From Lepidodermella squamata (Eukaryota > Animalia > Gastrotricha), in assembly GCA_047495785.1 (NCBI GenBank), contig JBLDXI010000019.1, forward strand, positions 3,410,001-3,474,000: a stretch of DNA of 64,000 bases, in the 5' to 3' direction. A program made the position numbers and the translations under genes. Below, piece after piece: positions 6,879 through 62,454 of the stretch (position 1 is the first letter of the stretch; each line of letters opens with the position of its first letter). The notes under the pieces were generated by a model, which saw only the letters and a list, made by a program, of their open reading frames with translations, searched no databases and had not been told where the DNA came from.

Positions 6879-7260
6879 CAGTTACTTTTAAAAGCAAGTA
6901 GTTCGCAAAAGCAGCAAAAACGATGAGCCTTTGGAGAAACTAGCGTCCTGTACGGAAAATAAAAGATTATTATTTGGCCTAGCTTTGGGATCCGCCAAAA
7001 TACACCTAGGGGCCTGTAGTTTTATTCTCGGATCAATTAATCGAAACTCCAGGTACATGTCGTTCAGACGACCGCCAAAACTTGATGTGAGAGATTTTCC
7101 TGTCATGGTGCGCAACCGTTCTGAATCGATTCTTATTATTGAAGAGAAAGGATAACTAGGTTTAAAGAGAAAATAAAGTTAATGCAACGGCGCTCCCCAC
7201 TTTATTCTGTGATGATTCAAAGTGGATTCAGTATTGGTTTTATTAATTTGCGAAATATAA

Positions 7261-42830: not shown

Positions 42831-44459
42831 TTTCAAAATATGCGTTATAAAAAATAATTGTGTCTTTGACGTTTTTGCGCTAGTTCATTATGATCAATGT
42901 CAGAAGGTGCGAAAGTCTGTCGTCATTTCGTAAATAATTGATGACAAAAAACACCACAACGGTAAATTATAAATTACCCGTTCCAATTACACACTTGATC
43001 TTAGCGGTGAAAGAATTCAAGGCATCTAAGATACGGTAGACAGCAACATCTACAAGCCATTGTCTTTGGGTGGCTTGCCCTTTAGGTTTTCTCCCGTCAT
43101 GCAAGATAAGAGGTGAATTTTGCAACTTTTCTGTACGCGAATTGTCTTTATTTGCATCAGACAAATTATGTCTTATTTAACCGACAACCGATAAGTGACT
43201 AATAAACTCCGACATGCACTTGTTCGATCGTGCTGTCTGTCCTCACGCGGAGTCATTTACGGGCGCTATACACCGTCGTCCGTCGTCACATCATCAATAA
43301 GGTGCGCAAATTAAAACAATAGGGTAAAGTTTCCTAAACACGCAAAGACGTTTTCGGCTTTTTTCGTACAATTGGCGTACAGTTGGCCACGGTCTTCGCC
43401 GTTTTTAAAGGTACTATTACTCGAAACGGTAGCCCGGAATCGCTTAAATTAAGTGAGTATGCATTACCTATAGGTTCGGAATAAGGCCTTTATTCTCGTT
43501 ATCCGGTGGAACTTCTTTGCTATTGGATATCGATTTTTGAAAGTAGCAACGAAAATCGTGACGATCGAAATTTGCGATGATTTCCAAGGGATTCCTTTAT
43601 GCAAAAATGGTCGCAAAATTTCGGTGAAAATATCCCTATCATCAGGATGACCTAAGCTATCGATCCATATACAAGTGTTCATATTTTGCGATTTTTTTGG
43701 TAATTTTTCAAGTTTAGCGCTGGCATGACCAAATAAAAATGGCGGGTTTCACAATTTGAAAATCCGGAAACATTCCCTCGATAAAGCTGTCGATCATGTT
43801 GGCATTGAAGATTTGTGCTCATATTCGTACTACGATCCATCGAAAGAGTGGATAAATATCACCGGCATGAATCAGCTGACCGCAGAGACGTCGTTGTTGA
43901 CTGGACGCCATTCGACTCACGCCATGAACGTACGTTAACCGGGGTCACTGCTAACTCTGTACCATCGATGTCCCACTGACCGAGGCGCTTGACCCGAAAT
44001 GGGGCGTTGGTTATTCATATTATTTTACATTCACTTAGCTAATGCGCGCATATTCATAAAGGCACATAGAGAGGCTTTGCACACGAGTGACCCTTGCCCC
44101 CTCAACTTTTGACACTATGACACGATGGTAAGCGCCCGATCTTCACTATCTATGCATTTTCAGCATAATATCCTTGGAGCCGTAGTCATAGGAAACGACT
44201 TTGTAAACATGGAAATAAGTTCGGGAGCCGCTGAAATCAAGTGATTCAAGTTTCATCGTAAGCTGGGTATACACAGAGCCAAAGTCCCGTACGCCATAAT
44301 TTGTTTTTCTCACAAACGTCAAAGACAAATTAAGCGACAAAGTAGTCCCAAATCCATAACCATGCCGGCAACTTTTCGAAGAGCCTAATATCAAGCAAAA
44401 CGAGTAGATTTGGGTCATTGTCAGGCTTTTAGCACGAGTCGAAGCGGTGATCTGATCAA

Positions 44460-44705: not shown

Positions 44706-47048
44706 ATGTTCTTCAAAAATTTCATCTGTACACTTTTGCCCCTGCTAAGTCACCAGCAATCAGTCGGCAGAACGACTGATTTGCATGTATTCACCCTGGT
44801 ACCCCTGACCGGCCGCGAGCCTTCAGACGGACGGGTTTGCGTTACAGCTTTGAAGATTCTCGTTGAAAGCTTGATGAACCAAACCAACTTCCTGCCGGGC
44901 TTCAACATTGTACTCAGAATCGAAGACGAAGCAAGAGCCGCAGCACAGTCTTCACGAACCTATTTCAAATTCATCGACAACTTCAAGCCAAACAATTTCT
45001 CAATCATAGCTCCAGTCATATTTGGACCTTATTTAAACTGCCAAATCTTCAATTACATCCCGAAGTTCTACAATCAAGTTTCATTCTCAAATGGGTGCAC
45101 TGGGCCGCTTGTTGTAGCGAAGAAAGCGAATGTTTTGAATTCATTATACCGTTCGCTCGGTCCATCTGAGCTGAACATACCCTTTCGGCTTCATTTTATA
45201 AAAGAGTACGGTAAGTGGAACCAGATTGGGGTAGTAACCTTTTCTGGGAATAGCAACGACCAAGTCTTAGCTAGAATGATGATTGATTCGAATGTTACCA
45301 ATGTTCATTTCGATGTTGGCCCCGATTTCAACCGAGTGATGGCTGAGAGGATCAGAGATAGTGACGCTCGTGTTATTTCAATAGATACTACCGACTTGAA
45401 CTTTTGCATGCAATTTCTATGCGAAACCTACGCAGCAGGAGTTAGGGCTCCTACTTACGTATTCATTTTCCACTTCCCATGCTACACTCCCCCAGATAAT
45501 CCCAGCCTTGTGCTACCGAAAGGATGCGGGCGGGAAGCGATATTGGAGCAAATGAAAGCTTCTTTCTTCATTGGGGTGTATCAAAGAGCTGTTCAACCAA
45601 CTTGGACATCTTCAATTGGGTATAATGTGCCCCAATTCGACGCGATGCTGGACTCAGCTCTGAATTACAGAATTTTAGGGGATAACGAACTGCGTCATAC
45701 GTGTCACGACGCGATGGCAGCAGCCTTGATCGGATTGAACACATCTGAGGTGATTTTGAAGACTCAATTCAACTCTTCGTTGAAAGACTTCACAAAGAAC
45801 CCTGAATTAGCTTTTCAAGTAATGAATCGAACTGCAGCGACAACGGATTTCTTCGGTCTGAGGATTGGTAGGATAAAATACTCAGCACGCGGAGAGATAG
45901 ACGATGACCAAGTCTTTGTATCTCAGTGGTACAACTCATCTCTGAGGCACATTTATCGAATCAATAGGAACGGTGGCTCGCGGACTAATTTCACAGTTTT
46001 CAGTTTCAACGAACCGATTTGGCATACAAAGACAGGAAAGCCGCCGAAAGACCTATCAAACATTGACATCAGAAACGTTGGCAAAATGTCGGCGTCAACA
46101 TTCTCAGGAACTGTTGCGTTCACTGTGATTAGTGAAGTTATTGTTATTCTGCTGCCATTCTTTGCGAGGATGAAGTTAGAAATTGAATCTGCAATCACAA
46201 TTTTCAGTCTACTCATTATTGGGTCGTCAGCCGTTTTGCATTCATTTGAAGGATCGGAACCGGTGCTATCGGTGTGCAATGCTCGGGTTGTTACCACTGT
46301 AGTTGGGGCATCGTTACTTAGCCAGCACATTTTCTTCAATATTTGGTCTTACAAGCGACTAATATCCCAATCGAAGAAGAAATGTATCAGTGGCCGGAAG
46401 AGCTTAGCCCGTATGGCATCTTACAGATCTGTCGGAGCTTTAAACAAAGTACCTCTTGGTAAAACGTTCAGCTCAATGTCTCAGAACCTTCAACGAGCTG
46501 CAATTCCGGAACTGATTCAATCCCATGACCCAGATTGGAAGGGCGCATTGGGGTGTCAAATCACTGTCGCCCTGATTTTGATGATTTTCTTGCTTGCCAT
46601 CGATCCATTGAAGATCATATCGTCATCTTCGAAAGTTCAATTCGATTCAACCGCAGATGCCTATTTCATTGAGCGAGAGTTGTTTTGTCACGGAGAATAC
46701 TTCTTAATTTGGACTGGTGCTCTACTTTCTATTCATTTCACGATGCTGTTAATGGCTTCCTTTATCGCATACTCCGCTCGTCACGCTGCGTTTGCACCTG
46801 CTCTTGAAGTTGAATTCAAATCTTTCGCGTTAGGTGCATTGAATGCAGCAACAGTTATAGCAGCGATGGTTCTTATTATGGTTATAATGTCGTCTAACCG
46901 CGTCGGGGATCAAATGATGGCTATGTCTGTTGGTTTGACTATCTTGTCTACTTCAAGCGGAATGCTGCTTCTGGCACGTCCTGCTATTTTGAAATTGAGA
47001 GCTGATAGAAGTGTTGTCGACCTGGGTAGGCTGTCTGCGCTGAACTGA
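44706..47048 (+). CDS. Intronless class C GPCR, GABA-B-receptor-like (Venus flytrap + 7TM, no Cys-rich domain), 780 aa
   Basis: Signal peptide; ANF-receptor-like domain (FLPGFNIVL, KWNQIGVV, HDAMAAALIGLN, DFFGLRIGRIKY); W..GKPPKD linker; seven hydrophobic segments with VCNAR before TM3 and IDPL after TM4. Confidence 0.88.
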   Translation: MFFKNFICTLLPLLSHQQSVGRTTDLHVFTLVPLTGREPSDGRVCVTALKILVESLMNQTNFLPGFNIVLRIEDEARAAAQSSRTYFKFIDNFKPNNFSIIAPVIFGPYLNCQIFNYIPKFYNQVSFSNGCTGPLVVAKKANVLNSLYRSLGPSELNIPFRLHFIKEYGKWNQIGVVTFSGNSNDQVLARMMIDSNVTNVHFDVGPDFNRVMAERIRDSDARVISIDTTDLNFCMQFLCETYAAGVRAPTYVFIFHFPCYTPPDNPSLVLPKGCGREAILEQMKASFFIGVYQRAVQPTWTSSIGYNVPQFDAMLDSALNYRILGDNELRHTCHDAMAAALIGLNTSEVILKTQFNSSLKDFTKNPELAFQVMNRTAATTDFFGLRIGRIKYSARGEIDDDQVFVSQWYNSSLRHIYRINRNGGSRTNFTVFSFNEPIWHTKTGKPPKDLSNIDIRNVGKMSASTFSGTVAFTVISEVIVILLPFFARMKLEIESAITIFSLLIIGSSAVLHSFEGSEPVLSVCNARVVTTVVGASLLSQHIFFNIWSYKRLISQSKKKCISGRKSLARMASYRSVGALNKVPLGKTFSSMSQNLQRAAIPELIQSHDPDWKGALGCQITVALILMIFLLAIDPLKIISSSSKVQFDSTADAYFIERELFCHGEYFLIWTGALLSIHFTMLLMASFIAYSARHAAFAPALEVEFKSFALGALNAATVIAAMVLIMVIMSSNRVGDQMMAMSVGLTILSTSSGMLLLARPAILKLRADRSVVDLGRLSALN

Positions 47049-47791: not shown

Positions 47792-50137
47792 TCAGTTCAT
47801 TGCGGACACTCTACCCATGTCATAAACGCCTCTGCCGGCTCTAAACTTTAAATACGCAGGGCGTGCCAGAAGCAGCATTCCGCTCGTTGAAGATAGGATT
47901 GACAAACCAACTGACATCGCTGTCATTTGATCCCCCACGCGGTAAGATGCCATTATAACCATGATTAGCGATATCGCCGCAATAACCGTCGCAGCATTCA
48001 CTGCACCAAGTGCCAAAGATTTGAATTCATTTTCAAGGGCAGGTGCATAGACTGCAGCATCGTGCCGAGCGGAGTAAGCGACAAAGCAAGCTATTAATAG
48101 CATCGTGAAATGAATCGCAAGAAGAGCCCCACCCCAGTACAAGAGATAATTTGCTTGGCAGAAAATTTCCCGTTCAATGAAATAGGCATCGGCGATCGAA
48201 TCGAACTGAACCTTCGAAGATGATGATTCAATCTTTAATGGGTTGATGACAAGCAAGAAAAGTATCAAAATTAGGGCCACAGCAATTTGACAGCCTAATA
48301 CCGCTTTCCATTCTATATTGGGAGCTTCGATAAAATCAGGCAAAGCAGACTGACGACTGTTTCGAGACATTGAACTGAAAGTTTGCCCCAGTGGTATTTT
48401 GTTCAAACCTACTCCCGATCTAGACTTACGAGCCATTCTCCTTCTCTGGGCTTTTAGTCCTTTCAGTATTAGTGTTGATAGAAGTCGTTTGTATGACCAC
48501 AGGCTGAAAAGGAGATGTTGGCAAAGTAGAGAAGTTCCAACTACAGTGGTCACAATCCGAGCGTTGCATATAGACAACTCAGGTTCTGAACCATCAAATG
48601 AGTTCAAAACTGCAGATGCCCCAATAATGAGTAGACTGAACAGGATCATCGCAGATTCAACGCGGAGTTTTAGCTTCAACAAGATGGGCATTCCTATGTT
48701 AAAAACTGCTGATACAGCAGCGAATCCAACAGTGCCCCAGAGCGTGGACGCCTTTATCCTGCCAACAATTCTGACTTCAATGTTTGATAGGTCTTTAGGC
48801 GGCTTCCCAGTCTTTGTATGCCAAATTGGAGGGTTGAAATTCAATACCGTGAAATTAGTCCTCGAGCCACCATTTCTATTGATTCGAAAGATGTGCCTCA
48901 AAGACGAGTTGTACCACTGTGATACAAGGACTTGGTCATCGTCTATCTCTCCGCGTGCCGAATATTTGATCCTACCAATCCTCAGCCCGAAGTAATCCGT
49001 CGTTACTGCGGTTTCATTCATTATTCTAAACACCAAATCAGGGTTCTTTGTGTAATCCTTCAAAGATAATTTATACTGTGTTTTCAAAATTTCCTCAGTT
49101 CTGTTCAGTCCGAGCAGGGCTGCAGCAATAGCATCATGACATGTGTGTCTCATTTCGTTATCTCCAAAAATTTTATAGTTCAGAGCCGAGTCCAGCAATG
49201 CGTCAAATTGAGGGACGTTGTACCCTATTGAAGATGTCCAAGACGGTTGAACAGCTCGTTGATACACTCCGAGGTAGAAAGAAGCTTTCATTTGCTCCAA
49301 AATCGCCTCCCTAGCGCATCCTTTCGGTAGAACCAGGTTCGGATTGTCAGGTGGGGTGTAGCCGCCAAAGTGAAACAGGAACACGTAATTCGGCGCTCTA
49401 ACACCCACGGCATAGGTTTCACAAAGAAACTGCATGCAAAAGTTCAAGTCGACAGAATCGACAGAAATAACACGAGCGTCACTGTCTCTGATTCGTTCAG
49501 CCATCAATCGGTTGAAATCTGGGCCAATATCGAAATGAACAACGGTGACATTCGAATCAATCATCAGCCTTGCAAGTATTTGGTCGTTGCCGTTCCCGGA
49601 GAAGGTGACTACGCCAATCTGGTTCCACTTGCCGTACTCTTTTATGAAATAATGTCGGAAAGGAACACTCAATTCAGATGGCCCAAGCGAACTATACAAC
49701 GAACGTAGTACATTCGCTTTCTTCGCAACGACAAGCGGCCCATTACATCCGCTTGAGAAGGAAACTTGCTTCAGGAACTGAGGAATGTAGCTGAAGGTCT
49801 GACAATTAACCAATGGTCCAAAGATGAGCGGTGCTAAGATTGAGGAATTGTTTGGCTTGAAGTTGTCGATGAATTTGAAATAGGTTCGTGAAGACTGTGT
49901 TGCGGCTCTTGCTTCGTCTTCGATTCTGAGTACAATGTTGTAGCCCGGCAGGAAGTTGGTTTGGTTCATCAAGCTTTCAACGAGAATTTTCAGGGTTGTA
50001 ACGCAAACCCTTCCGTCAGAAGGCTCACGGCCTGTTAGCGGTATCAGGGTGAATAAATGCAAGTCCGTCGTTCGGTTAGCTGATTGTTGGTGACTTAGCA
50101 GGGGCAATAATGTAAAGATCAAACCTCTGAGGAACAT
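47792..50137 (-). CDS. Intronless class C GPCR, GABA-B-receptor-like, inverted paralog of 44706-47048, 781 aa
   Basis: Colinear and highly similar to the + strand copy over the full length; convergent orientation. Confidence 0.88.
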   Translation of the reverse strand: MFLRGLIFTLLPLLSHQQSANRTTDLHLFTLIPLTGREPSDGRVCVTTLKILVESLMNQTNFLPGYNIVLRIEDEARAATQSSRTYFKFIDNFKPNNSSILAPLIFGPLVNCQTFSYIPQFLKQVSFSSGCNGPLVVAKKANVLRSLYSSLGPSELSVPFRHYFIKEYGKWNQIGVVTFSGNGNDQILARLMIDSNVTVVHFDIGPDFNRLMAERIRDSDARVISVDSVDLNFCMQFLCETYAVGVRAPNYVFLFHFGGYTPPDNPNLVLPKGCAREAILEQMKASFYLGVYQRAVQPSWTSSIGYNVPQFDALLDSALNYKIFGDNEMRHTCHDAIAAALLGLNRTEEILKTQYKLSLKDYTKNPDLVFRIMNETAVTTDYFGLRIGRIKYSARGEIDDDQVLVSQWYNSSLRHIFRINRNGGSRTNFTVLNFNPPIWHTKTGKPPKDLSNIEVRIVGRIKASTLWGTVGFAAVSAVFNIGMPILLKLKLRVESAMILFSLLIIGASAVLNSFDGSEPELSICNARIVTTVVGTSLLCQHLLFSLWSYKRLLSTLILKGLKAQRRRMARKSRSGVGLNKIPLGQTFSSMSRNSRQSALPDFIEAPNIEWKAVLGCQIAVALILILFLLVINPLKIESSSSKVQFDSIADAYFIEREIFCQANYLLYWGGALLAIHFTMLLIACFVAYSARHDAAVYAPALENEFKSLALGAVNAATVIAAISLIMVIMASYRVGDQMTAMSVGLSILSSTSGMLLLARPAYLKFRAGRGVYDMGRVSAMN

Positions 50138-51801: not shown

Positions 51802-52755
51802 ATGTTTTTCAAACTCGCGATATTTTTGGGGTTTAACCTTGCTCAATCAACATTAGCCACCACATTAAGTAAACGAAATCCCATTCATTTAGTTGTCCTG
51901 ATTTCCTCAGCCGACGTCGATCCTAACAATGCCAAAGTTTCACTATTATACAGCCCATCGCCGGATATTTTCTCGAGAGTTTCAACAAATCTATCTCTAT
52001 TCGAATCAAGCCATAAATTCGAGCTGAAATTCACGTTACCGAAGCTAAAGCGCCAATCAAATAATTCCTTTTCAGTGGTATGCAGCACCCTCCGTAATGC
52101 TACAGCAATATCGCCAATGGACCTTTTCAGAAGATCTGATCCAGTGGTTCAGACATCGAACGACGACAAAATTGGAGACGCAGAGGATGATTTACATTCC
52201 GTTCTATATGAAAGAATGGTTCTTAACGATATGGGGTCTCAAGCAGATCGATTTCTTGTGACGCAACGAGATTTGGCAACGAGCCAAGTTTCTTCGCTCG
52301 ATGCTGGGATCGTTGTTCAGGAGACATTTGGAACCCTGGCGGTTGAAAGATTTCTTGAATCTCATCACGCGGCGAAAGTTCTCTCCAGTTGTCACGGAAC
52401 CTTACAATCGGCGTTAATAGCTCAATCAAATTCAACAATTACTGATGAAGTTGAACTCAAAGTATGGCACATAGTCGTGCCAATTGTGGTTATAGCCCTC
52501 GCCGCAGCCATTGCGATAAACATCTGGCAGAAGTGTTGTAAATCTCAACAGCCTCAAACCCTGAACAACGAAGAAAACCAATCTTCGAACGTGGAGCTGG
52601 TCACTAGAGTCGCGCATGCCGTCCGGCTGGATACTATAGCCGAGAATGAAGAGGAACATGGCCAGAGCGATGCAACTGTGGTGAGACTAGAGCGACCCGG
52701 TGAAAAACTGCCGACTTACGATGAGGTGATAAAGCATTGGACACGGTATGGCTAG
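51802..52755 (+). CDS. Intronless orphan type I membrane protein F (LPxY-tail family)
   Basis: Signal peptide, ~200 aa ectodomain, TM (WHIVVPIVVIALAAAIAINIW), tail EKLPTYDEVI; paralog of 53259-54203. Confidence 0.8.
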   Translation: MFFKLAIFLGFNLAQSTLATTLSKRNPIHLVVLISSADVDPNNAKVSLLYSPSPDIFSRVSTNLSLFESSHKFELKFTLPKLKRQSNNSFSVVCSTLRNATAISPMDLFRRSDPVVQTSNDDKIGDAEDDLHSVLYERMVLNDMGSQADRFLVTQRDLATSQVSSLDAGIVVQETFGTLAVERFLESHHAAKVLSSCHGTLQSALIAQSNSTITDEVELKVWHIVVPIVVIALAAAIAINIWQKCCKSQQPQTLNNEENQSSNVELVTRVAHAVRLDTIAENEEEHGQSDATVVRLERPGEKLPTYDEVIKHWTRYG

Positions 52756-53258
52756 TAAGCTGTGGTGATAGGAAATTTTGAACTAAACGTAGTCGTTTGC
52801 TCCGGTTTTACTAGCAATTTTTTCAATAAAATGAACACGATTTCAAGTTTTTGTTTTTCTGCAATGACTGCATTCTGCTGGGAATACTGGCTTTCGGATT
52901 GCCGTAGTCCATGACTACAGCGGCATTCCAAGCTAAGCTGAGTGAGTTCATTCGATCCATACTTCAGCGAGTTTCAAAGCTGTTTTCAAGGCATTATTGA
53001 TAGAAATAACCGCAATTGCGGTTTCCAGACTTCATTCGCATTGTAGGTTATCATGCGTATTCTATACAATAACATAATGACTAAGCGTAAACTTCAACCA
53101 TGCTTTATACCAAAATACTACGGAGTTGTGCGCTGTTTAAGATTACCATCAGTGCATTCAAGCCGTGAAAATATATAAAGCCTTCTCTCGTTGTATGCTT
53201 ATGCACTGACCATTTATGTTTATTCATACATTTCAAAGAAACCCATGTGAAAATTAAA

Positions 53259-54203
53259 ATGAGACTAGTTATATTCGTTTTCTCGCTGATATCGGTTGCG
53301 CGCAACACTTCAGCAACGACTAACAACAAGCAAAATCCGATTCAACTCGTTGCTCTCATTTCAACCTCTCAGACAGATGCGAAGGATGCTCAATTTTCGC
53401 TACTCTACAGCCTATCGCCAGATCTCTACGTTAGAATCGCCTCAAACCTGTCGCTAACCTCAAACTCGCCAGATTTCGGTTTACAACGCCGCTACTTGCT
53501 CACGATGACCTTATCAAAACTGCAGCGCCATTCAAACAACTCGTTTCAAGTTCAATGCCGAGATAGGCTCAATCTGCCAAGCGACTCGACTTACTCGCCC
53601 TTTACTGCTCTTTCCAATGTTGAAGAGCCAACAGCTAGCCAAGTAAGTAATCGACAAATCGGAGATGCCGAGGACGATTTGCACTCAATTTTCTATGAAC
53701 GAATGGTATCGGACGATAACGGTGCGCAAATGGACCGGTTTGACTTTGTCCAGCTTGATATGACTACGAAAGAGAACCACGTTATCGACGGCGGAATCGT
53801 TGTCAGGGAAACTTTCGGAGCTCTAGCAGTTGAGCGTTTTCTTGAATCCCATCACAACAGCAAGAGAAAGATTTTATTCAGCTGCCACGGTGCCTTGGAG
53901 CCACTTAGCTTGCCACGGCCAAAAGAATCTCTGTCCCTCGATCAGGAGAGGGAGCTTGAAGTTTGGCATTACGTCACGCCTATTGTTATCGTGGGCTTGG
54001 TCGTTGCTTTAGGATGCAACATCTGGTTGAGGATTCGAACGCGGACGAATGAAGTTTCTACAATTGAGCCGCAATCTGGTGGAATGGAAATGATCGTCAC
54101 TGGCTCTCAGCCTCGGTCGTCGGTTGTAGCGATTCCTGAGGATAAGCTGCCATCTTACGAGGAGGTTATCGCCAATTGGAAGCGGAACACATACCAAACG
54201 TAA
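53259..54203 (+). CDS. Intronless orphan type I membrane protein G (LPxY-tail family)
   Basis: Shares IGDAEDDLHS..YERMV and ETFG.LAVERFLESHH with F; TM WHYVTPIVIVGLVVALGCNIW; tail DKLPSYEEVI. Confidence 0.8.
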   Translation: MRLVIFVFSLISVARNTSATTNNKQNPIQLVALISTSQTDAKDAQFSLLYSLSPDLYVRIASNLSLTSNSPDFGLQRRYLLTMTLSKLQRHSNNSFQVQCRDRLNLPSDSTYSPFTALSNVEEPTASQVSNRQIGDAEDDLHSIFYERMVSDDNGAQMDRFDFVQLDMTTKENHVIDGGIVVRETFGALAVERFLESHHNSKRKILFSCHGALEPLSLPRPKESLSLDQERELEVWHYVTPIVIVGLVVALGCNIWLRIRTRTNEVSTIEPQSGGMEMIVTGSQPRSSVVAIPEDKLPSYEEVIANWKRNTYQT

Positions 54204-54347
54204 CAACATTCGATCCAGGAAGTGATATCGACAAAATTCAAAATTTAATCACGAAATAAATTAAATTTCTGTAACAGACTGTGGAAGGATGAGCAAAAAA
54301 TTAGAACCGGGAATAATAAATTGAAAGGCAATCGCTTTATTTGGAAG

Positions 54348-55679
54348 TTATCGCCTGAGGGACGTTGTGTTAAGTTTTGCGGCTCGCATAGCAGCAACCA
54401 CTTCCGCGTATTCTGGCAACCGTCCATTAAGGTCAGTTATTGGCACAACAATTTCTGTTTGCGCAGGTGGTGCTTGCGTAACATCGTCGCGGAATAACTT
54501 CCGTCTTAGTATAATAATAAGGAAAGCAATAAGGATTGTAAAGCATAGAACTGTCGCAAGCACGATTGTGGCTTTCTTAAACGCATCGCCTTCTTTGTTT
54601 TTCTCGCTATAGTTCTCATCGGATTCAGTAGGATCTAGAGAAAGCTCAGGCGCCAACTGGCGTCCAGTAGTCATCACGTCTGTCGGTGACTTTGTATATA
54701 ACCAGGTTGACGAAGCGGTGGTGTACGACACGGTGGGTATCCGGGTTGACGAGGCGGTGGTGTACGACACGGTGGGTATCCGGGTTGACGAAGCGGTGGT
54801 GTACGACACGGTGGGTATCCGGGTTGACGAGGCGGTGGTGTACGACACGGTGGGTATCCGGGTTGAAGAGGCGGTGGTGTACGACACGGTGGGTATCCGG
54901 GTTGATGTCGAAGTCGTAGTAATTCTAGAAGGAATGTGCTGCCATATCCTTGTGGTAGTTGTGGTCGTAGTCGGGGTTGTAGTTGTGGCTGATGTTTGCC
55001 TTGAAGTTACAACAGATTTACCAGTGCTGATACGGGAAGTTGCGTTCGCGTTGACTGTCTGCCATTTCAAACCACCCCTCAATGTTACTGGACTAAGCTC
55101 TCCGTTGCAAATTGCATATAAATTGTTTGTTTCGCTTCGAAGGAAGTTAAACAAGAAGGCTGAACTCATTCGCAATTTCGCAACAACTGGCTTCTCGTAC
55201 CAAACGTAGTTCGAATCGCCTGGCTTCATAATGAAATCTCCAGATTTCTCATCAAGGTCCATAGCAGCGTCGTAAAAGTAGGAGTATAATGAATCGTAAT
55301 CAGCTGCAGAAGAAGTGGGGTTTGCTGATGTGTTACAATAGCCCAGGACTGAGAAGAAACTGATTTCAGGCCAGCCATTTCTCCGAACCAGAGAGCATCG
55401 CATCTGCAAAAAGTCCGGTCGATCGAGCATCGCCGACGATATTGAAAGTCGATAGTCAGCATTTCCAACTGATAAGGCCCGCTGCAGAGCTGAAACAATT
55501 TTATCATAAATTCGAGGATCATTCTGCGAGACAATGATGTCGAAATCAGTGACGGCTGTTGCTTGAATAGAAGTTCCTTTTTGCGTAAAAGTTGCAACAA
55601 AGTGGAGTGGTTGCAGGGTCCACGCGTTTGCCAATACGTAAAAGGAGGAAGCAATCGCTATCGTGAGGCTAAACATCAT
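54348..55679 (-). CDS. Intronless type I membrane protein H with mucin-like repeat stalk (LPxY-tail family)
   Basis: Signal peptide, ectodomain, Thr/Ser stalk, TM ATIVLATVLCFTILIAFLIIIL, tail GRLPEYAEVV. Confidence 0.85.
   Translation of the reverse strand: MMFSLTIAIASSFYVLANAWTLQPLHFVATFTQKGTSIQATAVTDFDIIVSQNDPRIYDKIVSALQRALSVGNADYRLSISSAMLDRPDFLQMRCSLVRRNGWPEISFFSVLGYCNTSANPTSSAADYDSLYSYFYDAAMDLDEKSGDFIMKPGDSNYVWYEKPVVAKLRMSSAFLFNFLRSETNNLYAICNGELSPVTLRGGLKWQTVNANATSRISTGKSVVTSRQTSATTTTPTTTTTTTRIWQHIPSRITTTSTSTRIPTVSYTTASSTRIPTVSYTTASSTRIPTVSYTTASSTRIPTVSYTTASSTRIPTVSYTTASSTWLYTKSPTDVMTTGRQLAPELSLDPTESDENYSEKNKEGDAFKKATIVLATVLCFTILIAFLIIILRRKLFRDDVTQAPPAQTEIVVPITDLNGRLPEYAEVVAAMRAAKLNTTSLRR
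54705..54905. repeat. Coding minisatellite, 5 x 39 bp (TRIPTVSYTTASS)
   Basis: Near-perfect units GGTTGACGA(A/G)GCGGTGGTGTACGACACGGTGGGTATCCG. Confidence 0.95.
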
Positions 55680-56071
55680 CCACTTTCATTGAGGGAAATT
55701 AACGTAGAACAGAGAAGTTATCACTGCAATTGTAAGTAGTTTTCTTAACATGTTTATTTGTGTCGGCAAAGATCATGCGAAACACCTACACCCCAGTTGA
55801 CATTATAAAGCAATTTACAAAGTTTTTATTCATCAGCCGTGTTGTTACCAGAAATAAGCCTAATGTCGTTTGATAGCAAACATCACAACCGTACCGCTTA
55901 CCATGAATTTATTAAAGCTGCAGCAATTCCAACATCTGCTCATCTTATGATCTCTGATGACTACTTAGCTCTGTAAAATACCTCTCACCGGCTTTGTTTC
56001 CAGCCCCTAGTGAGTTGAGTATCTCTAATTTAAGCTTCATTTCCAAGCCATCAAAACTCAAAATGATCACT

Positions 56072-56400
56072 TTTAAAGAAGTTGACGAAGTTGAACTTGA
56101 AGTATAGCACAATGTCGTGCCGATTGTTGTTATAGCCCTTGCAGCAGCCATTATAGCGATTAACATCTGACAGGAGGGCTTCAAATCTCAACAGCCTCAA
56201 ACTTATTTGAACAACGAAGGAAACCAATCTTCGAATGTGGGGCTGGTCTCTAGAGTTGCACATGTCATCCGGTTGGATACCATAGCCGAGAATGAGGAGG
56301 AACATGGTCGAGGTGTGACAACTGTGGTTAGACTGAGAAGCCACTAAGAAGCTGCCGACTCACGATGAGGTCATAAGGCATTGGACACGTTATGGGTAGT
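56072..56400 (+). pseudogene. 5'-truncated pseudogene copy of F
   Basis: Aligns to 52440-52755, with TGG>TAG and TGG>TGA nonsense changes and a frameshift near the tail. Confidence 0.85.
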
Positions 56401-57100
56401 GAGCTGTGGTGAAGGGAAACTTTTATTTCGATGTAACCATTTGCTCCGATTTTACTTGCGGATTTTCGTCAATAAAATGTTGTCGATTACATGGGCTATG
56501 TCTTCTACTTTTCAAGACTGTATTCCATCGGGAGCAATGGCCTTCGGATGCTCAATTCCGGACCCCCTCAGTGTCGTACAGGCCTCAACATTAATCAGAG
56601 GGTAAAAATGGATTTGTGCGCGAACGCCAAGTCGAAAGTTTGAAAAATTTCAGGGCCCATGGCGCTCATGTCAAAACCGTAGTTTTGACTATTTGGGCGT
56701 CTTTTATTCATTTATAAATTTTGGAAGGGGGTTCTCGCGTGATGTAACATGTAACTAATGGCTTCAGTTGAGTGAGTTCATTCGATCTATATATCTACGA
56801 GTTGCAGAGCAGTTTTCAAGGTATTTTTGGAAGAAATAACCGCAATCACGTTGTCTAAAGCTTAAGACTTCATTCATATTACAGCATGGGGCATAAATAT
56901 TGAGCCGACTTCAATTATTCATAGGTCAGTCATTTCGCCTCCGATTCTCTCATATTATATACCGATGCCGCCATCCATCATTTGCATTCATCTTTAAAGA
57001 TGCATCTCATCTCGGAAATCGCGCCAAAAACACTACTTTTTGCGATCTTTAGAACTTCAACTAATAAATTTTATATTTTGAAATGTTAACTATTAAACGA

Positions 57101-57583
57101 ATGAAGCCTCGTCATTCTAATTTTCACGCTGCAAATTATTCGGAATATTCATGACCTGAAAAGCGAAACCGTCTTTTGGTCAACCGGCGTGCTCTGATTG
57201 CGGCTTCCTATCTACGTCACATGACTAATCTGAGATACAGATGACGATTTGCACTCAATTTTCTGTGAACGAATTTTTTCGGACTATAACGGTGCGCAAA
57301 TGGACGGGATGTTTCGCCCAGCTTGATATGGCTACGAAAGAGAACCACGTTATCGATGGTGGAATTGTTGCTCAGGAGCTTCGGAGCTCTAGCAGTTGAA
57401 CTTTTCCTTGAATCACATCACAACAGCAAGGTGAGGATTCTATTCAGCTGCCACTTGGCCTTGGAGCTTGTTACTGGCACTAAACCTCGACTGCCAGTTT
57501 TAGCAATTCCTGAAGATAAGCCGCCATCTTACGGGCAGGTTATGGTTATGACCAATTGGAAGCGGAACACATCTCAAACGTAA
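57101..57583 (+). pseudogene. Deleted/frameshifted pseudogene copy of G
   Basis: Start remnant at ~57101. GATTTGCACTCAATTTTC, FGALAVE.FLESHHNSK and IPEDK.PSY..V..NWKRNT align to G; the TM is deleted. Confidence 0.85.
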
Positions 57584-57792
57584 CAGCATTCGGTCGTTAA
57601 AATCGTAGCATCAACATTTTACTATGAAATGTATTAACAATAAATAAGAATTGAGCAGCTCTGATTATTTGACCAACTTTTTAAGCACGCTAACTTCTAT
57701 TAAAGTGACTTGCGCCAATGAAAAATATTAGCTAAAATATGAGAAACTAGGAATTAGAAATGAAGATGTAATAGTTTTATTTAATATTTAAG

Positions 57793-59040
57793 TTATCGTC
57801 TGTGAACGAATGCTTTCAGTTTTTCAGCTCGCATAGCAGCTACCACATCCGCGTATTCTGGCAACCGTCCATCCAGCTCAGTTAATGGCACAGCGATTTC
57901 TATTTGCGCAGCTGCTGGTTCTTCCGCAACAGAGCCGAATAATGATTCATCAGTTTTCTTTACTTTCAGTTTAAATAAAATACTAAGGCAAACAATGCAA
58001 ATGATTGCTATGCCTAGAACTGCCGAGAGCACGATCGTGGCTATCTTATACATCGAGCATTCGTTGCTTTCTTTGCAGGAGGTGACTGATTTTTCGGGAT
58101 TCGGAGACTGTCGTCCGGTAGTCATTAGAACTGTTGTTGTATTTGCTGACACCCGAGGTGACGAGGCGGTGCTGTTCGACACGGTGGACATCTGTGATGT
58201 TGTAGCAGGAGTAGTTGTAGTAGTAGTAGTTGTTGTTGTAGAAGAAGTAGTAGTGGTAGTAGCAGTGGTAGTAGCTGTAGTTGTGGTAGTAGTAGTAGTG
58301 TCAGTAGTGGTAGCAGCAGGAGTAATAGTAGAGATAATAGTAGGATATCGCGGCGATGTCCTAGGGGTTGTAGTTGACGACTTAGCAGTGGTGATACGAG
58401 AAGTTGCGGTCGAGCTTAAAGTCTGCCATTTCAAACCAGCCTTGGGCGTTACTGGACTAAGCTCTCCGTTGCAGATGGCATACAAGTTGTTTGTTTCGCT
58501 TCGAAGGAAGTTAAACAAGAAGGCTGAACTCATTCGCAATTTCGCAACAACTGGCTTCTCGTACCAAACGTAGTTCGAATCGCCTGGCTTCATAATGAAA
58601 TCTCCAGATATTTCAGAAAGGTCCATAGCAGCGTCGTAGAAGTAGGAGTATAATGAATCGTAATCAGCTGCGGAAGAAGTGGGATTTGCTGATGTGTTAC
58701 AATAGCCTAGGACTGAGAAGAAACTGATTTCAGGCCAGTCATCTCTCCGAGCCAGTGAGCATCGCATTTGCAAAATGTCCGGTCGATCAACCAACGCCGA
58801 CGATATTGAAAGTCGATGGTCAGCATTTCCAACTGATAAGGCCCGCGGCAGAGCTGAAACAATTTTATCATAAATTCGAGGATCATTCTGCGAGACAATG
58901 ACGTCGAAATCAGTGACGGCTGTTGCTTGAATAGAAGTTCCTTTTTGCGTAAAAGTTGCAACAAAGTGGAGTGGTTGCAGGGTCCACGCGTTTGCCAATA
59001 CGTAAAAGGAGGAAGCAATCGCTAACTTGAGGTTGAACAT
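57793..59040 (-). CDS. Intronless type I membrane protein H', paralog of H, with poly-Thr stalk
   Basis: Ectodomain is nearly identical to H; Thr-rich trinucleotide stalk at ~58200-58330; TM; tail GRLPEYADVV. Confidence 0.85.
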   Translation of the reverse strand: MFNLKLAIASSFYVLANAWTLQPLHFVATFTQKGTSIQATAVTDFDVIVSQNDPRIYDKIVSALPRALSVGNADHRLSISSALVDRPDILQMRCSLARRDDWPEISFFSVLGYCNTSANPTSSAADYDSLYSYFYDAAMDLSEISGDFIMKPGDSNYVWYEKPVVAKLRMSSAFLFNFLRSETNNLYAICNGELSPVTPKAGLKWQTLSSTATSRITTAKSSTTTPRTSPRYPTIISTITPAATTTDTTTTTTTTATTTATTTTTSSTTTTTTTTTTPATTSQMSTVSNSTASSPRVSANTTTVLMTTGRQSPNPEKSVTSCKESNECSMYKIATIVLSAVLGIAIICIVCLSILFKLKVKKTDESLFGSVAEEPAAAQIEIAVPLTELDGRLPEYADVVAAMRAEKLKAFVHRR

Positions 59041-59696
59041 CCTTATTTCATTGAGAAATTGACATAGAACAGTATTCATCACTTTTTATATACTAGCAAA
59101 CGTAAGAGGTTTTTAAACGTCTTGAATGACTCCAACGAAGATCCTGCGATACGCCCTCACACGAGCTGCCATTGTAAAACAAGTTAAAACGTGTTCGTCA
59201 CCTAGTCGTCAAATGTTCGTCATCAGTTGAGTTGCCGCCAGAAATAAGTGAACATCACATTTGTAACTCTTTAGTAAGGTAGGTATATCATTCTAGTTCT
59301 AGTCATTTATGTATATGCTAGTGATCTATCTATGACCTAGGCATCCAGATAGGAACTGATAGCTCGCATTATCTTTTCTAGCCCCAGCGAATCGATTTAA
59401 GTGGATCCCAGTTTCACCTAACCCCTCAACAGGTTTCCAGTAAAAAAAAGGAATCGAAAATCGGAGATACGCATTAATTCACAAGACGTGTAATAAACCC
59501 GAAAGCATAGATTGTTTTGTGTTTTACTCATCGAACGAATTCGTTCCGTATTTTGCATCAAAGTAAGGATTGCTAGCGCTTCTTCGCTTTAAAAATAGTT
59601 GCATCATTAGATCTTCATAATATCGCTTATGAAAGTAACATATAAGGAATGCTAATTCTTTCTCGTTCGCCTGAAATACGGAGTCTTAATCGCCGA

Positions 59697-62454
59697 TCAG
59701 AAGTTACCGAGCAGGCAGTAACTCCGAAGACTGGCCAGTACGACGAAAATGACCCATAGGAGGACGAAAAACATTGTAGAAAGGATTTTCGGCACCAAAG
59801 GTCCACCCAGCTCGCCGCCAATCGGAGGGAGACGTCTCAGTACGAGGACCACAACGCCCGCGAACGCGAAGCAACAGTAAATGGTGACGATGAAGCGAAA
59901 ATTGCCGGCCGGGACCTACAAAATTAATGAAAATGTGTATAAGATAAAAACACCAAAGCTCACTGCTCACCTTGTAGTAATCTCCGTGATATGAGTGATA
60001 AGCTGCCCCAACTGTCCATGCCATTCCAATCCCGAGGAATACATTAACAGCACTCGAACCGGTGATATGGCCGATAGCAGCATCCGCCTCTCTTTCATGT
60101 ATAGCCGCATGTCTGCTTGCAAAAGTGTCTGGAAGACCCATTCCGAAGGCAATGAGCGTAACAGCAGTTACGTCATCCTCCATACCAATCGTACAACCGA
60201 AACCGGTTGCTAAATCACCGATTAAAGCCGAGTTGAGGGCCATCACCCCGAGGAGAAGTATAAAAGCCAACCACCCGTGAAGGTAACGAGCGGGAGGAAT
60301 TGCCGCTGCTAGCAACTTCCAGGGCAAGGATATCACGTAGATGAAAACTATCCAGACCTTCTTACCAAGGGACATGGTTTTGTTGTCAGAGGGTGAGGGA
60401 GAATGGCCTCGTTCTGCCGAGTCGCTGTGATCTTCATGCTCGTCAGACTTCTCCTCAAATGATATGTCAACAGCTTGCTTGAACTGGTCGCTCCACGTCG
60501 TCAGACGAAACATTTCAGCCATGTCACTGACCCGTAGCAAGCGGTCTAAAGCTTGGCTCAACTCTTCATCCTCACAGATGCCTAGTTTGATGGACGAAGG
60601 ACTGCCTAACAAAGGTCGCCCTAATGGGTTCGTTGGGGGTCTTGACAGGACAATAGGTTCGAGAAGTTCGATCGAAAAAGTGAAGATCTCCCCTGTTCGT
60701 TCCGTGTCGACGATTTCTAGCTCGATATGACCCTTTGGGTCGTCGTTTTCGAACCTCACAATTAACTCTTTCGGCAAGATAAAGTCCTTCCCGGATATCG
60801 CTGATCCAGACATCACTTTGAAGGGTATGGCGACCTGGCCTCTAGCCCCTCGGGATCTCACCACCTTTATTTGGACCTTACCAATGTTGTCAGGTATCGC
60901 CATTTCAGTACTTTCGAAATGAAACACCCCGCAGTGATCGTCGTCCAAAATCACGACAGTTGCCTCCTTGTTACTAAGAAGAGTGCTCACAACATGGCTA
61001 CCGTCACCAAGACCTCCAAACAACTTCGGATGGGAGAGGCGCACGTAAAATTCTTCATCCTCCTCGAACTCGTCATCGTCAATAATTTCAATCGCGATCT
61101 CAGCTGTTTTCTGGCCTGGTTCAAAGGTAAGGATGCCCTTAACTGCTACGAAGTCTGACCCAGCTGTAGCAGTTCCGTCGAATGTCTCGTAGTTTACTGT
61201 TAGTCCTAATTCGTCGACACCAGGGCCAGCTCTTTCGACAGTAAGCTTCATGGTGCCGCAATTTTCCATACAAGTTTCCCAGGTATCGACAAAACCAACG
61301 AATTGAACGTTGTTAAGTTGGATATCATCTTTTGGCGGCTCTTTGCCATGGGTTTGGCGGTATTGTGAAAGTCTTTTCTTAACCATGGCCTTCGAAATCA
61401 CAGACCCGCTAGCAGCACTAGATCTCGCGGTTTGAATCCTGTAGAAAGCTGCCGATTTCGGGGTGACTTTCAATAGTTCCAACTCAGCCATTTCTTCCAT
61501 TTCCGCCTGGCTAAGCTGAGGGTTAGTTTCCCGAATTTCGCGTAGGATTTTCGCCAGTTTCTTCCTCCGCTGAGTTTGAACGTAAGCCCCAGTGTCCATC
61601 GATTCCTCGATTTCCTCGCCATGATGGTCAGCCGGGGTCAAAATCCCGATTTTGTACGCTAAGGCGTAACTTAAATCACGAATCCAGCCTTTTTCGACCA
61701 CCCAACATATCACAACAACGCATGGGAATAGGAGTAAGGTCACAATGGCCTCCCACAGCTCGATAATCCCGGGTGAAATTTGATCGACGAGTAAGTAGAG
61801 CCAGATGTAGGAGCATATCGCTAGGAATGAAGACACGAAAAATAACGCCTGGTCTTCGATCCGCTTAGTTTTCGGGCTTTTCACGCTTCCCAGACATATG
61901 CCGGTGATTAGTAGGAAGTGATACGCCCCGCTTCCGACAATTAACGAAGGGCCGAGCTCATCGGTCTCAAAATGATGCTTTATCACCTCGAGGAATGGTA
62001 GGAAAATCTCTGCGGCGGAGGCTCCGATGCAGAAAACTGTGAGGGTTGCTACAACCGGGTGCCAAATGGGGACTTCAACTTCCTTAACAGTTCCATTCTG
62101 TAGCACGACCTTCTTCTTCCGTTTTTGTGATATGATGACTTCGATAGTGGATAACAACCGGTCTGTGAGAATGTTGATGCCATACAGTAAGTAGGCCAAG
62201 GCGAGGAGGTAGATAATGGCTCGGTAGGCCCGGACGCCGGGTGATGTTTCGTAGGGCTGAGGCAGCCATGCTGGTAGCAACAGGCCGTGGCCACACCCGT
62301 CGACGTGTGAGCCTTCGAGGGAACAACTTCCGAATTCGTGGTGACCACCGTGGTCGTCGTGGCTGGCTTCTACTTCGTGTTCGCTAGACGTGAGGCCAGA
62401 TGATCCGTGGCCGGACTCGCCAGCCTCGAGGCCGTGGCCTGAGGCGGGCAACAA
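59697..62454 (-). CDS. NCX/SLC8-family cation/Ca2+ exchanger with two Calx-beta domains; divergent alpha repeats; true start unresolved
   Basis: Alpha-1 region LTVFCIGASAAEI, ELGPSLIVGS, Calx-beta (ETFDGTATAGSDF, IIDDDEFEEDEEFYVRLS), TWSDQF and alpha-2 region GLPDTFAS. Intron 59916-59970 restores the C-terminus ...GGELGGP..LLGNF*. An in-frame stop lies 16 codons upstream of 62454 and no ATG is present, so a 5' exon is missing from my model. Confidence 0.9.

What the first reader, a model, noticed from the sequence alone, without database searches (positions are those of the whole stretch)
51802..59040. Birth-and-death cluster of intronless orphan receptors sharing an unrecognised ectodomain and an LPxYxxV tail
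F, G, H and H' all have SP, then an ectodomain starting (N/Q)P(I/L)(H/Q)(L/F)V, with SP/DP..Y/F..I/V.S.L, F...C, D.D.L.S..Y, FL.S and C.G.L, then a TM and a tail LP(T/S/E)Y..V(I/V)...(W/M). F/G and H are remote but share this skeleton, including two Cys. LPxY is a known WW-domain (Nedd4-family) ligand variant and YxxV an endocytic motif. Two decayed copies lie between the intact genes. I recognise no family, so this is a candidate new fast-evolving surface, immune or recognition receptor family.
Basis: partly seen in the sequence, partly recalled or inferred. Interest (0 to 1): 0.75.

Follow-up and report, generated by a model that had tools for sequence, protein, structure and literature searches.

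The report
Orphan membrane glycoproteins with ligase-docking tails
A small invertebrate genome holds one local cluster of four intact and two broken single-exon genes for surface-type membrane glycoproteins that match no known family and end in a short tail motif which elsewhere docks Nedd4-type ubiquitin ligases. It is a real but fairly ordinary lineage-specific family, and nothing shows an immune role.

Summary
F (51802-52755 +), G (53259-54203 +), H (54348-55679 -) and H' (57793-59040 -) are uninterrupted ORFs. Each has a signal peptide, a ~200-aa ectodomain, one TM helix and a tail ending [KR]LPxYx[ED]V[IV]. H and H' add a 130-145-aa Ser/Thr/Pro stalk.

F/G are 45% identical and H/H' about 62-70% overall (ectodomain DNA 94%). 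The F/G-to-H link is weaker. G-H aligns end to end at ~23% identity (Smith-Waterman 64, z about 6), but F-H and profile-profile tests are not significant.

The "birth-and-death" layout is one ~3.6-kb tandem duplication of [F 3' end-G-H]. It left a truncated psiF, a broken psiG and an intact H'.

No relative turned up in Pfam, PDB, 5.8-15 billion proteins, metagenomes or the rest of this genome. The neighbouring NCX exchanger is only 35-37% identical to any named species, so orphan status is expected.

The tail matches the LPSY-type PY motif of Commissureless. The genome has at least three WW-HECT ligase genes, and the motif recurs in an apparently unrelated Cys-rich array on contig C32. The H/H' ectodomain is the most conserved part (dN/dS 0.3-0.4), which argues against rapid ectodomain diversification.

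AlphaFold models failed (pLDDT 34-37), so the fold is unknown. Expression is untested. Earlier notes of this scan report other orphan PPxY-tailed membrane families in this genome.

The parts
51802..52755 (+). Gene F: 317 aa from the first ATG. Signal peptide, ~200-aa ectodomain (Cys 94, 197), TM ~residues 223-245, CC after the TM, 70-aa tail with KLPTYDEVI at 52708-52731.
53259..54203 (+). Gene G: 314 aa, 45% identical to F, same architecture. Tail KLPSYEEVI at 54147-54170.
54348..55679 (-). Gene H: 443 aa. Signal peptide, ~195-aa N-terminal domain (Cys 95, 115, 191), Ser/Thr/Pro stalk at residues 202-347, TM ~368-392, tail RLPEYAEVV at 54396-54419.
54705..54905 (-). 39-bp tandem repeat, 5.2 copies, 97% matches. 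It encodes the 13-aa unit TASSTRIPTVSYT of H's mucin-like stalk. H' has a Thr run ((ACN)n, 58202-58343) instead.
56083..56399 (+). psiF: copy of only the last third of F (residues ~227-321, 85% nt identity). It has TGG>TAG, TGG>TGA, a 2-bp deletion and LPTY>LPTH. Similarity to F stops abruptly at the equivalent of 52443, the duplication breakpoint.
57223..57583 (+). psiG: pieces of G residues ~146-226 and 283-318 in three frames with one TGA. The 5' half and the TM segment are missing. The motif reads KPPSYGQV.
57793..59040 (-). Gene H': 415 aa from the ATG homologous to H's start (an in-frame ATG also lies at 59079). The ectodomain DNA is 93.6% identical to H, while stalk, TM and tail are much more diverged. 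Tail RLPEYADVV at 57841-57864.
52443..55826 (.). Duplication unit, copy 1 (F 3' end - G - H with H's upstream region).
   Evidence: collinear blastn segments
56083..59195 (.). Duplication unit, copy 2 (psiF - psiG - H'), collinear with copy 1 in the same order and orientation, 70-88% nt identity.

Best explanation
F, G, H and H' form a small, lineage-restricted family of single-exon type I membrane glycoproteins. A ~200-aa domain of unknown fold faces outward or into the lumen. In F/G it sits directly on the membrane. In H/H' it sits on a 130-145-residue mucin-like stalk that is probably O-glycosylated.

The short cytoplasmic tail ends in [KR]-L-P-x-Y-x-[ED]-V-[IV]. I read this as an 'LPxY' PY motif that docks the WW domains of Nedd4-family HECT ubiquitin ligases. 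On that reading, the proteins themselves, or partners held by the ectodomain, are ubiquitinated and routed from the surface to endosomes or lysosomes, in the manner of Commissureless, PRRG4 and NDFIP-type adaptors.

The present gene order came from an old F/G/H diversification followed by one ~3.6-kb tandem duplication of [F 3' end-G-H]. That duplication left psiF (probably truncated at birth), psiG (decayed) and a second working H gene.

Shown: the architecture, the duplication history, purifying selection, the absence of detectable relatives, and the presence of the motif and of WW-HECT ligases. Inferred: membrane topology, glycosylation, ligase docking, the sorting role, and homology of F/G with H.
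For: - Architecture and motif.
- Selection: F vs G has pN 0.34-0.43 against pS 0.74-0.78 (saturated). The H vs H' ectodomain has dN/dS 0.29-0.40, and its DNA is 93.6% identical against 75-88% for neighbouring non-coding or pseudogene DNA.
- One collinear duplication. Breakpoint and disabling changes in psiF.
- Only these copies in the genome.
- G-H ectodomain similarity: SW 64, z about 6, end to end. Tail similarity: G-H z 6.0, BLASTP E 0.001 over TM plus tail.
- PY reading: LPSY of Commissureless is a PY motif needed for Nedd4-dependent Robo1 ubiquitination. The mutagenesis primer printed in that paper reads ...LPSYDEAL..., nearly the same as KLPSYEEVI and KLPTYDEVI here (PMC12101832). L/PPxY motifs of LAPTM5 bind Nedd4 WW domains (PMC2064599).
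- Ligases: the genome encodes at least three WW-HECT genes, at C1:640821-642794, C13:1135666-1137672 and C38:474837-477280.
- Recurrence of the motif: the same tail is found on the C32 array, whose ectodomain looks unrelated. One member's TM plus tail hits Pfam WBP-1 (WW domain-binding protein 1) at 1.2e-5, 26.4 bits against a cut-off of 28.1. PP[ST]Y[DE]E[VA] occurs 15 times in the genome against 0 in the reversed-pattern control.
Against: - No binding, localisation or expression data exist.
- The H/H' TM and tail evolve at about the neutral rate (dN/dS ~0.8-1.2), although the LPEYA[ED]VV core is kept.
- There is a single PY motif per tail. Many proven adaptors have two or three.
- The motif also fits YxxPhi (AP-2) and a pYEEI-like SH2 site, so ligase docking is not the only reading.
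- F/G-H ectodomain homology is not seen by hhalign, by my profile-profile test or for the F-H pair with BLOSUM62.
Confidence: 0.55

Rival explanations
1. There are two unrelated orphan families, F/G and H/H', that happen to be neighbours. They share only a generic PY tail module acquired independently, as the C32 family shows is possible.
For: hhalign of the F/G profile against the H/H' profile aligns only the tail (probability 1.3%). The profile-profile permutation test has z 0.7-1.1. F-H Smith-Waterman has z about 0 with BLOSUM62. The same tail occurs on the C32 array, whose Cys-rich ectodomain looks quite different.
Against: G-H aligns over the whole ectodomain (residues 5-197 vs 4-181). 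The score of 64 was reached by 0-1 of 2000 shuffles and exceeds every real-sequence control (maximum 43). G-H' has z 3.8 and F-H has z 3.9 with BLOSUM45. The order of predicted secondary-structure elements is similar in the two low-confidence models. Domain length, adjacency and extended tail similarity beyond LPxY (V-x-hydrophobic-P upstream, W/M-[KR] downstream) also agree.
Confidence: 0.22
2. The tail tyrosine is a phosphorylation switch. LPxY-[ED]-[ED]-V-[IV] (YEEVI in G) acts as a Src-family-type SH2 docking site, or simply as a YxxPhi endocytic signal read by AP-2, so the proteins signal or cycle without Nedd4.
For: Y-x-x-V fits YxxPhi. YEEV(I) resembles the pYEEI optimum of Src-family SH2 domains (established knowledge, not tested here). 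The motif is present in all four proteins.
Against: The invariant L-P two and three residues before the Tyr is the hallmark of PY motifs and is not needed for SH2 or AP-2 binding. Genome-wide, the same Y-[DE]-E-[VA] flank follows PP[ST] (15 sites against 0 in the control), the canonical WW ligand. The ITIM rule (S/I/V/L at Y-2) is not met, because Y-2 is Pro.
Confidence: 0.13
3. This is the first reader's reading: a fast-evolving immune or self/non-self recognition receptor family that diversifies by birth and death.
For: Surface-type architecture, tandem copies with relics, a rapidly changing repeat stalk, and no detectable relatives.
Against: There are only four genes at one locus, from one duplication event. 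The ectodomain is the most conserved part between H and H' (dN/dS 0.29-0.40; 93.6% nt identity against a 75-88% neutral background). No immune-type domain or signalling motif is present. Orphan status is expected from the poor sampling of the lineage.
Confidence: 0.07
4. These are not functional genes: chance ORFs or dead relics.
For: No transcript or protein record was found.
Against: Four ORFs of 314-443 codons each keep signal peptide, TM and tail motif. F/G keep 45% identity with saturated synonymous sites. The true relics next to them are riddled with stops and frameshifts at similar age.
Confidence: 0.03

Closest known systems
Commissureless (Drosophila) and PRRG4: single-pass proteins whose LPSY/PPxY motifs recruit Nedd4-family ligases to sort a partner receptor
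   Same: Single TM and a short cytoplasmic region carrying an LPxY motif followed by acidic residues. Comm reads LPSYDEAL (primer in PMC12101832); G has KLPSYEEVI and F has KLPTYDEVI. The inferred working is the same: WW-domain docking followed by endosomal sorting.
   Different: No sequence homology outside the motif, and no Pfam hit. Here there is a cleavable signal peptide and a large ~200-aa folded ectodomain (plus a mucin stalk in H), with one PY motif rather than two. No partner is known.
WBP1 / VOPP1 family (Pfam PF11669, WW domain-binding protein 1)
   Same: Type I membrane proteins with PY-motif tails. The C32 protein carrying the same KLPTYEEV tail scores 26.4 bits on this model.
   Different: F, G, H and H' give no PF11669 hit at E up to 1. 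The ectodomain is much larger and Cys-poor.
NDFIP1/2, LAPTM4/5: Nedd4 adaptors with L/PPxY motifs
   Same: Use of the Leu variant of the PY motif to bind Nedd4 WW domains (PMC2064599).
   Different: Those are multi-pass proteins with several PY motifs and no ectodomain.
Membrane-tethered mucins and dystroglycan-type proteins (globular domain + Ser/Thr/Pro stalk + TM + short tail; dystroglycan ends in PPxY)
   Same: H and H' have a Ser/Thr/Pro stalk (50% or more) with a 13-aa tandem repeat, N-glycan sequons, one TM and a PY-type tail.
   Different: No SEA, cadherin-like or other known domain. The globular domain is distal to the stalk. F/G lack a stalk altogether.
Other orphan PPxY-tailed membrane-protein arrays reported by this scan in the same genome (s1-411486, s1-401950, s1-379708, s1-374178)
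   Same: Lineage-specific, tandemly duplicated membrane proteins whose main conserved cytosolic feature is a PY motif.
   Different: Those have other topologies (tail-anchored, 4-TM, 8-TM, 2-TM). This one is type I with a sizeable ectodomain. I did not re-test those notes.

Membership tests
PY-motif (L/PPxY) ligands of Nedd4-family WW domains | Core [LP]-P-x-Y in a cytosolic segment | tested here: met
   LPTY, LPSY, LPEY and LPEY lie 50-70 residues after the single TM and 7-15 residues from the C-terminus. The cytosolic side is inferred from signal peptide plus one TM.
PY-motif (L/PPxY) ligands of Nedd4-family WW domains | WW-HECT ligases present in the same organism | tested here: met
   WW (PF00397) matches lie directly upstream of HECT (PF00632) matches on the same strand at three loci: C1, C13 and C38.
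PY-motif (L/PPxY) ligands of Nedd4-family WW domains | Physical binding to a WW domain and ubiquitin-dependent sorting | not testable with these tools
   Needs pull-down or ITC with tail peptides, and cell assays.
Commissureless / PRRG4 | Sequence homology to the family beyond the PY motif | tested here: not met
   No Pfam family other than two sub-threshold TM-region hits at E up to 1 on the whole proteins. No hits in the word search or the exhaustive HMMER search.
WBP1/VOPP1 (PF11669) | Match to the Pfam model at or above 28.1 bits | tested here: not met
   No hit for F, G, H or H'. Only the C32 protein reaches 26.4 bits.
SEA domain (PF01390) | Match to the SEA profile | tested here: not met
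   A lead came from the ESM Atlas at 0.80, inside the noise range. Pfam gives no hit at E up to 10 on the ectodomains. The genome-wide SEA search finds 23 loci but none here. hhalign against eight SEA domains of this genome gives probability 0.1-0.2%. The profiles are shallow, so a very remote relationship is not excluded.
SEA domain (PF01390) | G|S(V/I)(V/I) autoproteolysis site | tested here: not met
   The genome's own SEA domains have FRKG-S-I/V-I. F/G have AG-IVV and GG-IVV with no Ser/Thr/Cys nucleophile, and H has KP-VVA.
Mucin-like stalk (H and H' only) | Long Ser/Thr/Pro-rich, repeat-containing segment between the globular domain and the TM | tested here: met
   Ser/Thr/Pro is 50% or more over residues 202-347 (H) and 190-325 (H'), peaking at 0.68 and 0.88 per 40 aa. 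A 39-bp repeat of 5.2 copies lies in H. O-glycosylation itself was not tested.
ITIM / ITSM immune tyrosine motifs | (S/I/V/L)xYxx(I/V/L) or TxYxx(V/I) | tested here: not met
   The residue at Y-2 is Pro in all four proteins.
   G-H has z 5.8-6.5 and G-H' z 3.6-3.8. F-H has z about 0 with BLOSUM62 and 3.9 with BLOSUM45. hhalign and the profile-profile test are negative. Fold comparison was impossible (pLDDT 34 and 37).

The most novel reading that the evidence does not exclude
The ~200-aa ectodomain is a new fold that defines a phylum-restricted surface system. A membrane-hugging form (F/G) and a stalk-elevated form (H/H') of the same domain would act as a matched pair, for instance cis/trans partners or a receptor and its decoy, with surface levels set through Nedd4 docking at the shared tail.
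Probability: 0.08. Interest if true: 0.5.

Novelty: new member of a known kind. Interest (0 to 1): 0.27.

Why it matters
If the reading is right, this locus adds one more case to a pattern that earlier notes of this scan report for this genome: many unrelated, lineage-specific membrane-protein families that share little beyond a Nedd4-docking PY motif. That pattern would suggest heavy use of ubiquitin-ligase adaptors or substrates to control the cell surface in a poorly studied animal group. The locus itself is small, and its ectodomain cannot yet be classified. Its value lies in being a clean, datable example of a [three-gene] block duplication with differential survival, and in offering a candidate for structure determination. 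It does not bear on a major open question.

Tried and rejected
- **Pfam.** I scanned the whole proteins (E up to 1) and the ectodomains alone (E up to 10). Nothing appeared beyond two sub-threshold hits over F's TM helix.
- **Word-index search of 5.8 bn proteins.** G and H residues 1-225 gave no hits.
- **Exhaustive HMMER search of 1.84 bn representatives with the F+G profile.** It gave two hits (E 3e-9 and 4e-7). Both are HEAT-repeat proteins (HEAT_2 1e-53) that scored by summing four repeats, so I rejected them as spurious.
- **PDB sequence search with both profiles.** Nothing came up except a membrane cofactor protein TM-region hit at E 7.8.
- **ESM Atlas.** The H ectodomain's best scores were 0.84 (unnamed) and 0.80 (SEA), both inside the stated noise range. 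G had no usable hit.
- **SEA lead.** I followed it up and it was not supported.
- **AlphaFold2.** H with a 2-sequence alignment gave pLDDT 33.9. The G ectodomain with a 4-sequence alignment gave pLDDT 37.4. I did not run fold search, because models this poor give meaningless matches.
- **Metagenome and viral contig scans with the ectodomain alignment.** No relatives were found.
- **Exact-product look-ups for H and G.** They are not on record, so there is no expression evidence either way.
- **Rfam and inverted repeats in the region.** Nothing was found.
- **Motif-trimmed similarity test.** That inflates global scores, so I repeated it with boundaries not chosen on motifs and report those figures.
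- **Organism identity.** I did not establish it. Other notes of this scan say 'probably the gastrotrich Lepidodermella squamata', which I did not test.

Full report
**What is there**

The window is part of contig C19 of a 121-Mb eukaryotic genome. It is an invertebrate, not human. Between 51.8 and 59.1 kb lie four uninterrupted ORFs:

| Gene | Coordinates | Strand | Length |
|---|---|---|---|
| F | 51802-52755 | + | 317 aa from the first ATG |
| G | 53259-54203 | + | 314 aa |
| H | 54348-55679 | - | 443 aa |
| H' | 57793-59040 | - | 415 aa |

Each protein starts with a hydrophobic leader ending in a small-x-small site. A ~200-aa hydrophilic region with 3-5 N-x-S/T sequons and two or three Cys follows. 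Then come exactly one Kyte-Doolittle transmembrane segment and a 50-70-aa tail.

H and H' insert a Ser/Thr/Pro-rich region between the globular part and the TM helix (residues 202-347 and 190-325). In H this region contains a 39-bp repeat of 5.2 copies at 97% matches, encoding TASSTRIPTVSYT. In H' it contains a long Thr run.

All four tails carry LPxYx[ED]V[IV] 7-15 residues from the end. The small inaccuracies are listed under the observation check.

**How the copies are related**

F and G are 45% identical over their full length. H and H' are 62-70% identical overall, with 93.6% DNA identity in the ectodomain.

The link between the two pairs is weaker:
- BLASTP finds only TM plus tail (E 0.001) and one ectodomain stretch (E 0.04).
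- hhalign of the two 2-sequence profiles aligns only the tail.
- A profile-profile permutation test is not significant.
- With ectodomain boundaries not chosen on the motifs, G against H gives a Smith-Waterman score of 64 covering almost the whole domain at ~23% identity.
- That score has z 6.5 against uniform shuffles and 5.8-6.0 against window-restricted shuffles, and 0-1 of 2000 shuffles reach it.
- The best score of G against 90 real unrelated 200-aa pieces from this genome is 43.
- G-H' scores 51 (z 3.6-3.8).
- F-H has z about 0 with BLOSUM62 and 3.9 with BLOSUM45.

Other points agree with one family: equal domain length, a similar order of predicted secondary-structure elements in the two (poor) models, adjacency, and tail similarity that extends beyond LPxY. 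I put the single-family reading at roughly three in four.

**History of the locus**

blastn of the first half of the region against the second gives a strictly collinear series:

| Copy 1 | Copy 2 | Identity |
|---|---|---|
| F 3' end, 52443-52833 | 56083-56479 | 81% |
| Intergenic, 52936-53016 | 56766-56846 | 84% |
| G middle, 53653-53901 | 57223-57467 | 84% |
| G 3' end, 54096-54215 | 57470-57595 | 79% |
| H with 150 bp upstream, 54295-55826 | 57734-59195 | 70-87.5% |

This is one ~3.6-kb tandem duplication of [F 3' end-G-H].

Similarity between F and psiF begins abruptly at 52443, so psiF most likely never had a promoter, signal peptide or ectodomain. It now carries two Trp-to-stop changes, a 2-bp deletion and Y-to-H in the motif. 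psiG survives as pieces in three frames, lacks the 5' half and the TM segment, and its motif reads KPPSYGQV.

Non-coding and pseudogene DNA of the two copies differs by K = 0.14-0.30. The whole-genome six-frame searches with G, H and the four-sequence profile find nothing outside this locus. "Birth and death" is thus literally true but amounts to a single event.

**Selection**

Between F and G, synonymous sites are saturated (pS 0.74-0.78) while pN is 0.34-0.43.

Between H and H', the regions behave differently:

| Region | dN | dS | dN/dS | DNA divergence K |
|---|---|---|---|---|
| Ectodomain | 0.035-0.05 | 0.12 | 0.29-0.40 | 0.067, well below the neutral background |
| TM plus tail | not listed | 0.27-0.29 | ~0.8-1.2 | 0.19, about the neutral background |

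The genes are therefore maintained. The outer domain is the constrained part, which is the opposite of what a diversifying recognition receptor would show. Gene conversion of the 5' part cannot be excluded with two sequences.

**Relatives elsewhere**

I found none in:
- Pfam, on whole proteins and on ectodomains.
- The word-index search of 5.8 bn proteins.
- PDB sequences.
- JGI metagenome contigs and viral contigs.
- The exhaustive HMMER search of 1.84 bn cluster representatives with the F+G profile. Its two hits are HEAT-repeat proteins scored by repeat summation.

The control matters here. The Na/Ca exchanger immediately next to H' (59704-62454, Calx-beta and Na_Ca_ex domains) is only 35-37% identical to the best named homologues (nemertean, molluscs, a bryozoan, vertebrates). 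It is 49% identical to one unnamed ENA metagenome contig. The lineage is so thinly sampled that a 200-aa extracellular domain without detectable relatives is expected. It is weak evidence of a new kind of protein.

**Fold**

AlphaFold2 gave pLDDT 33.9 for H and 37.4 for the G ectodomain, so I did not run fold searches. The ESM Atlas offered SEA at 0.80, inside its stated noise range.

I tested that lead. Pfam SEA does not match. A genome-wide SEA search finds 23 loci with the canonical G|S(I/V)I site, none of them here. hhalign against eight of those SEA domains gives probabilities of 0.1-0.2%. F/G have G-IVV with no nucleophile. The fold remains unknown.

**The tail and the likely mechanism**

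A 33-position profile of the tails, searched over the whole genome, picked up a second locus on contig C32. It lies at C32:1070-1087 kb. There at least 11 same-strand single-ORF type I proteins share a different, Cys-rich ectodomain with the pattern FLGC...LFDS...SC.PGY...ACFDD...CP. Six of them end in one of these sequences:
- KLPTYEEVM
- RLPTYAEVI
- KLPTYEEVI
- KPPSYEEVM
- KLPSYDEAL
- KPPSYAEAL

One of these proteins hits Pfam WBP-1 (WW domain-binding protein 1) at 1.2e-5, just under the cut-off.

Back-translated patterns show PP[ST]Y[DE]E[VA] at 15 sites on 11 contigs, against 0 for the reversed control. The CTN-Leu version occurs only in F, G and one C32 gene. The tail is thus one instance of an extended PY motif that this genome uses repeatedly.

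In the literature, the LPSY of Commissureless is a PY motif required for Nedd4-dependent ubiquitination and endosomal routing of Robo1. The mutagenesis primer printed there spells LPSYDEAL (PMC12101832). L/PPxY motifs of LAPTM5 bind Nedd4 WW domains (PMC2064599).

The genome encodes at least three ligases with WW domains directly upstream of a HECT domain. I therefore take ligase docking and ubiquitin-dependent sorting, of the proteins themselves or of partners, as the most likely working (about 0.55). YxxPhi/AP-2 or phosphotyrosine/SH2 use of the same tyrosine are alternatives or additions. None of this is shown experimentally.

**Comparison with known families and verdict**

The proteins work most like PY-tailed single-pass proteins (Commissureless/PRRG4, WBP1/VOPP1). 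In H/H' they look like small membrane mucins. They fail every sequence-based membership test I could run, so I file them as an orphan family, not as members of any of those families.

Earlier notes of this scan describe several other orphan PPxY-bearing membrane-protein arrays in the same genome (s1-411486, s1-401950, s1-379708, s1-374178). I did not re-test them. They make this locus one more example of a genome-wide theme rather than something singular.

The finding is real and cleanly resolved, but moderate to low in surprise. Immune or recognition function, rapid ectodomain evolution and a new fold all remain unsupported.

Noticed in passing
L032-L034 (G000:C32:1070001-1096000), ORFs e.g. 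L033:2206-3360, 3613-4602, 4997-6115, 6373-7623: A same-strand tandem array of at least 11 single-ORF type I membrane proteins with a Cys-rich ectodomain (FLGC...LFDS...SC.PGY...ACFDD...CP). Some end in (L/P)P[ST]Y[EDA]E[VA] PY tails. Others end in a Cys-cluster after the TM plus RADPE[IL]AA. One hits Pfam WBP-1 at 26.4 bits. It may be the '8-Cys ectodomain, Cys cluster, Pro/Tyr tail' array of note s1-430021, but I could not confirm that.
   Followed up: partly
window 44706-47048 (+) and 47792-50137 (-): Two convergent single-ORF class-C-GPCR-like genes (780 and 781 aa) are visibly close paralogues in translation, so this looks like another recent local duplication next to the cluster.
   Followed up: no
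window 1158-6878 vs 35614-42836 (all - strand): Three consecutive ORFs (1158-2258, 2952-4097, 5487-6878) each have a recognisable paralogue in the same order ~34 kb away (35614-36639, 39497-40399, 41010-42836). This suggests a larger three-gene block duplication of secreted, discoidin/LamG-like proteins.
   Followed up: no
G000:C1:640821-642794, C13:1135666-1137672, C38:474837-477280: Three loci have 2-4 WW domains directly upstream of a HECT domain on the same strand. They are the Nedd4-family ligase candidates of this genome.
   Followed up: partly
G000 contigs C30 (135-387 kb), C50 (197-252 kb), C60 (16-43 kb); loci L035-L046: Large tandem arrays of SEA-domain proteins have a nearly invariant FRKG|S(I/V)I(A/S)DYIVALRSLTQLTE core. 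There are at least 23 matches over the Pfam cut-off.
   Followed up: no
L009 (ENA ERZ27332993 contig k141_1015652, 5353 bp): An unnamed metagenome contig carries two tandem NCX genes. One is 49% identical to the window's NCX, far closer than any named species (35-37%). It probably comes from an unsampled relative of this animal.
   Followed up: partly
window 54204-54347 and 57584-57792: G and H (and psiG and H') are convergent, with only 144 bp (213 bp) between their stop codons, so their 3' UTRs must be very short or overlap.
   Followed up: no
P0121, P0122: The exhaustive profile search returned HEAT-repeat proteins at E 3e-9 and 4e-7 purely by summing four weak repeat matches to '...AVERF..S.D.DP...'. 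Repeat proteins can produce apparently significant hits for shallow profiles, so such hits need checking.
   Followed up: yes
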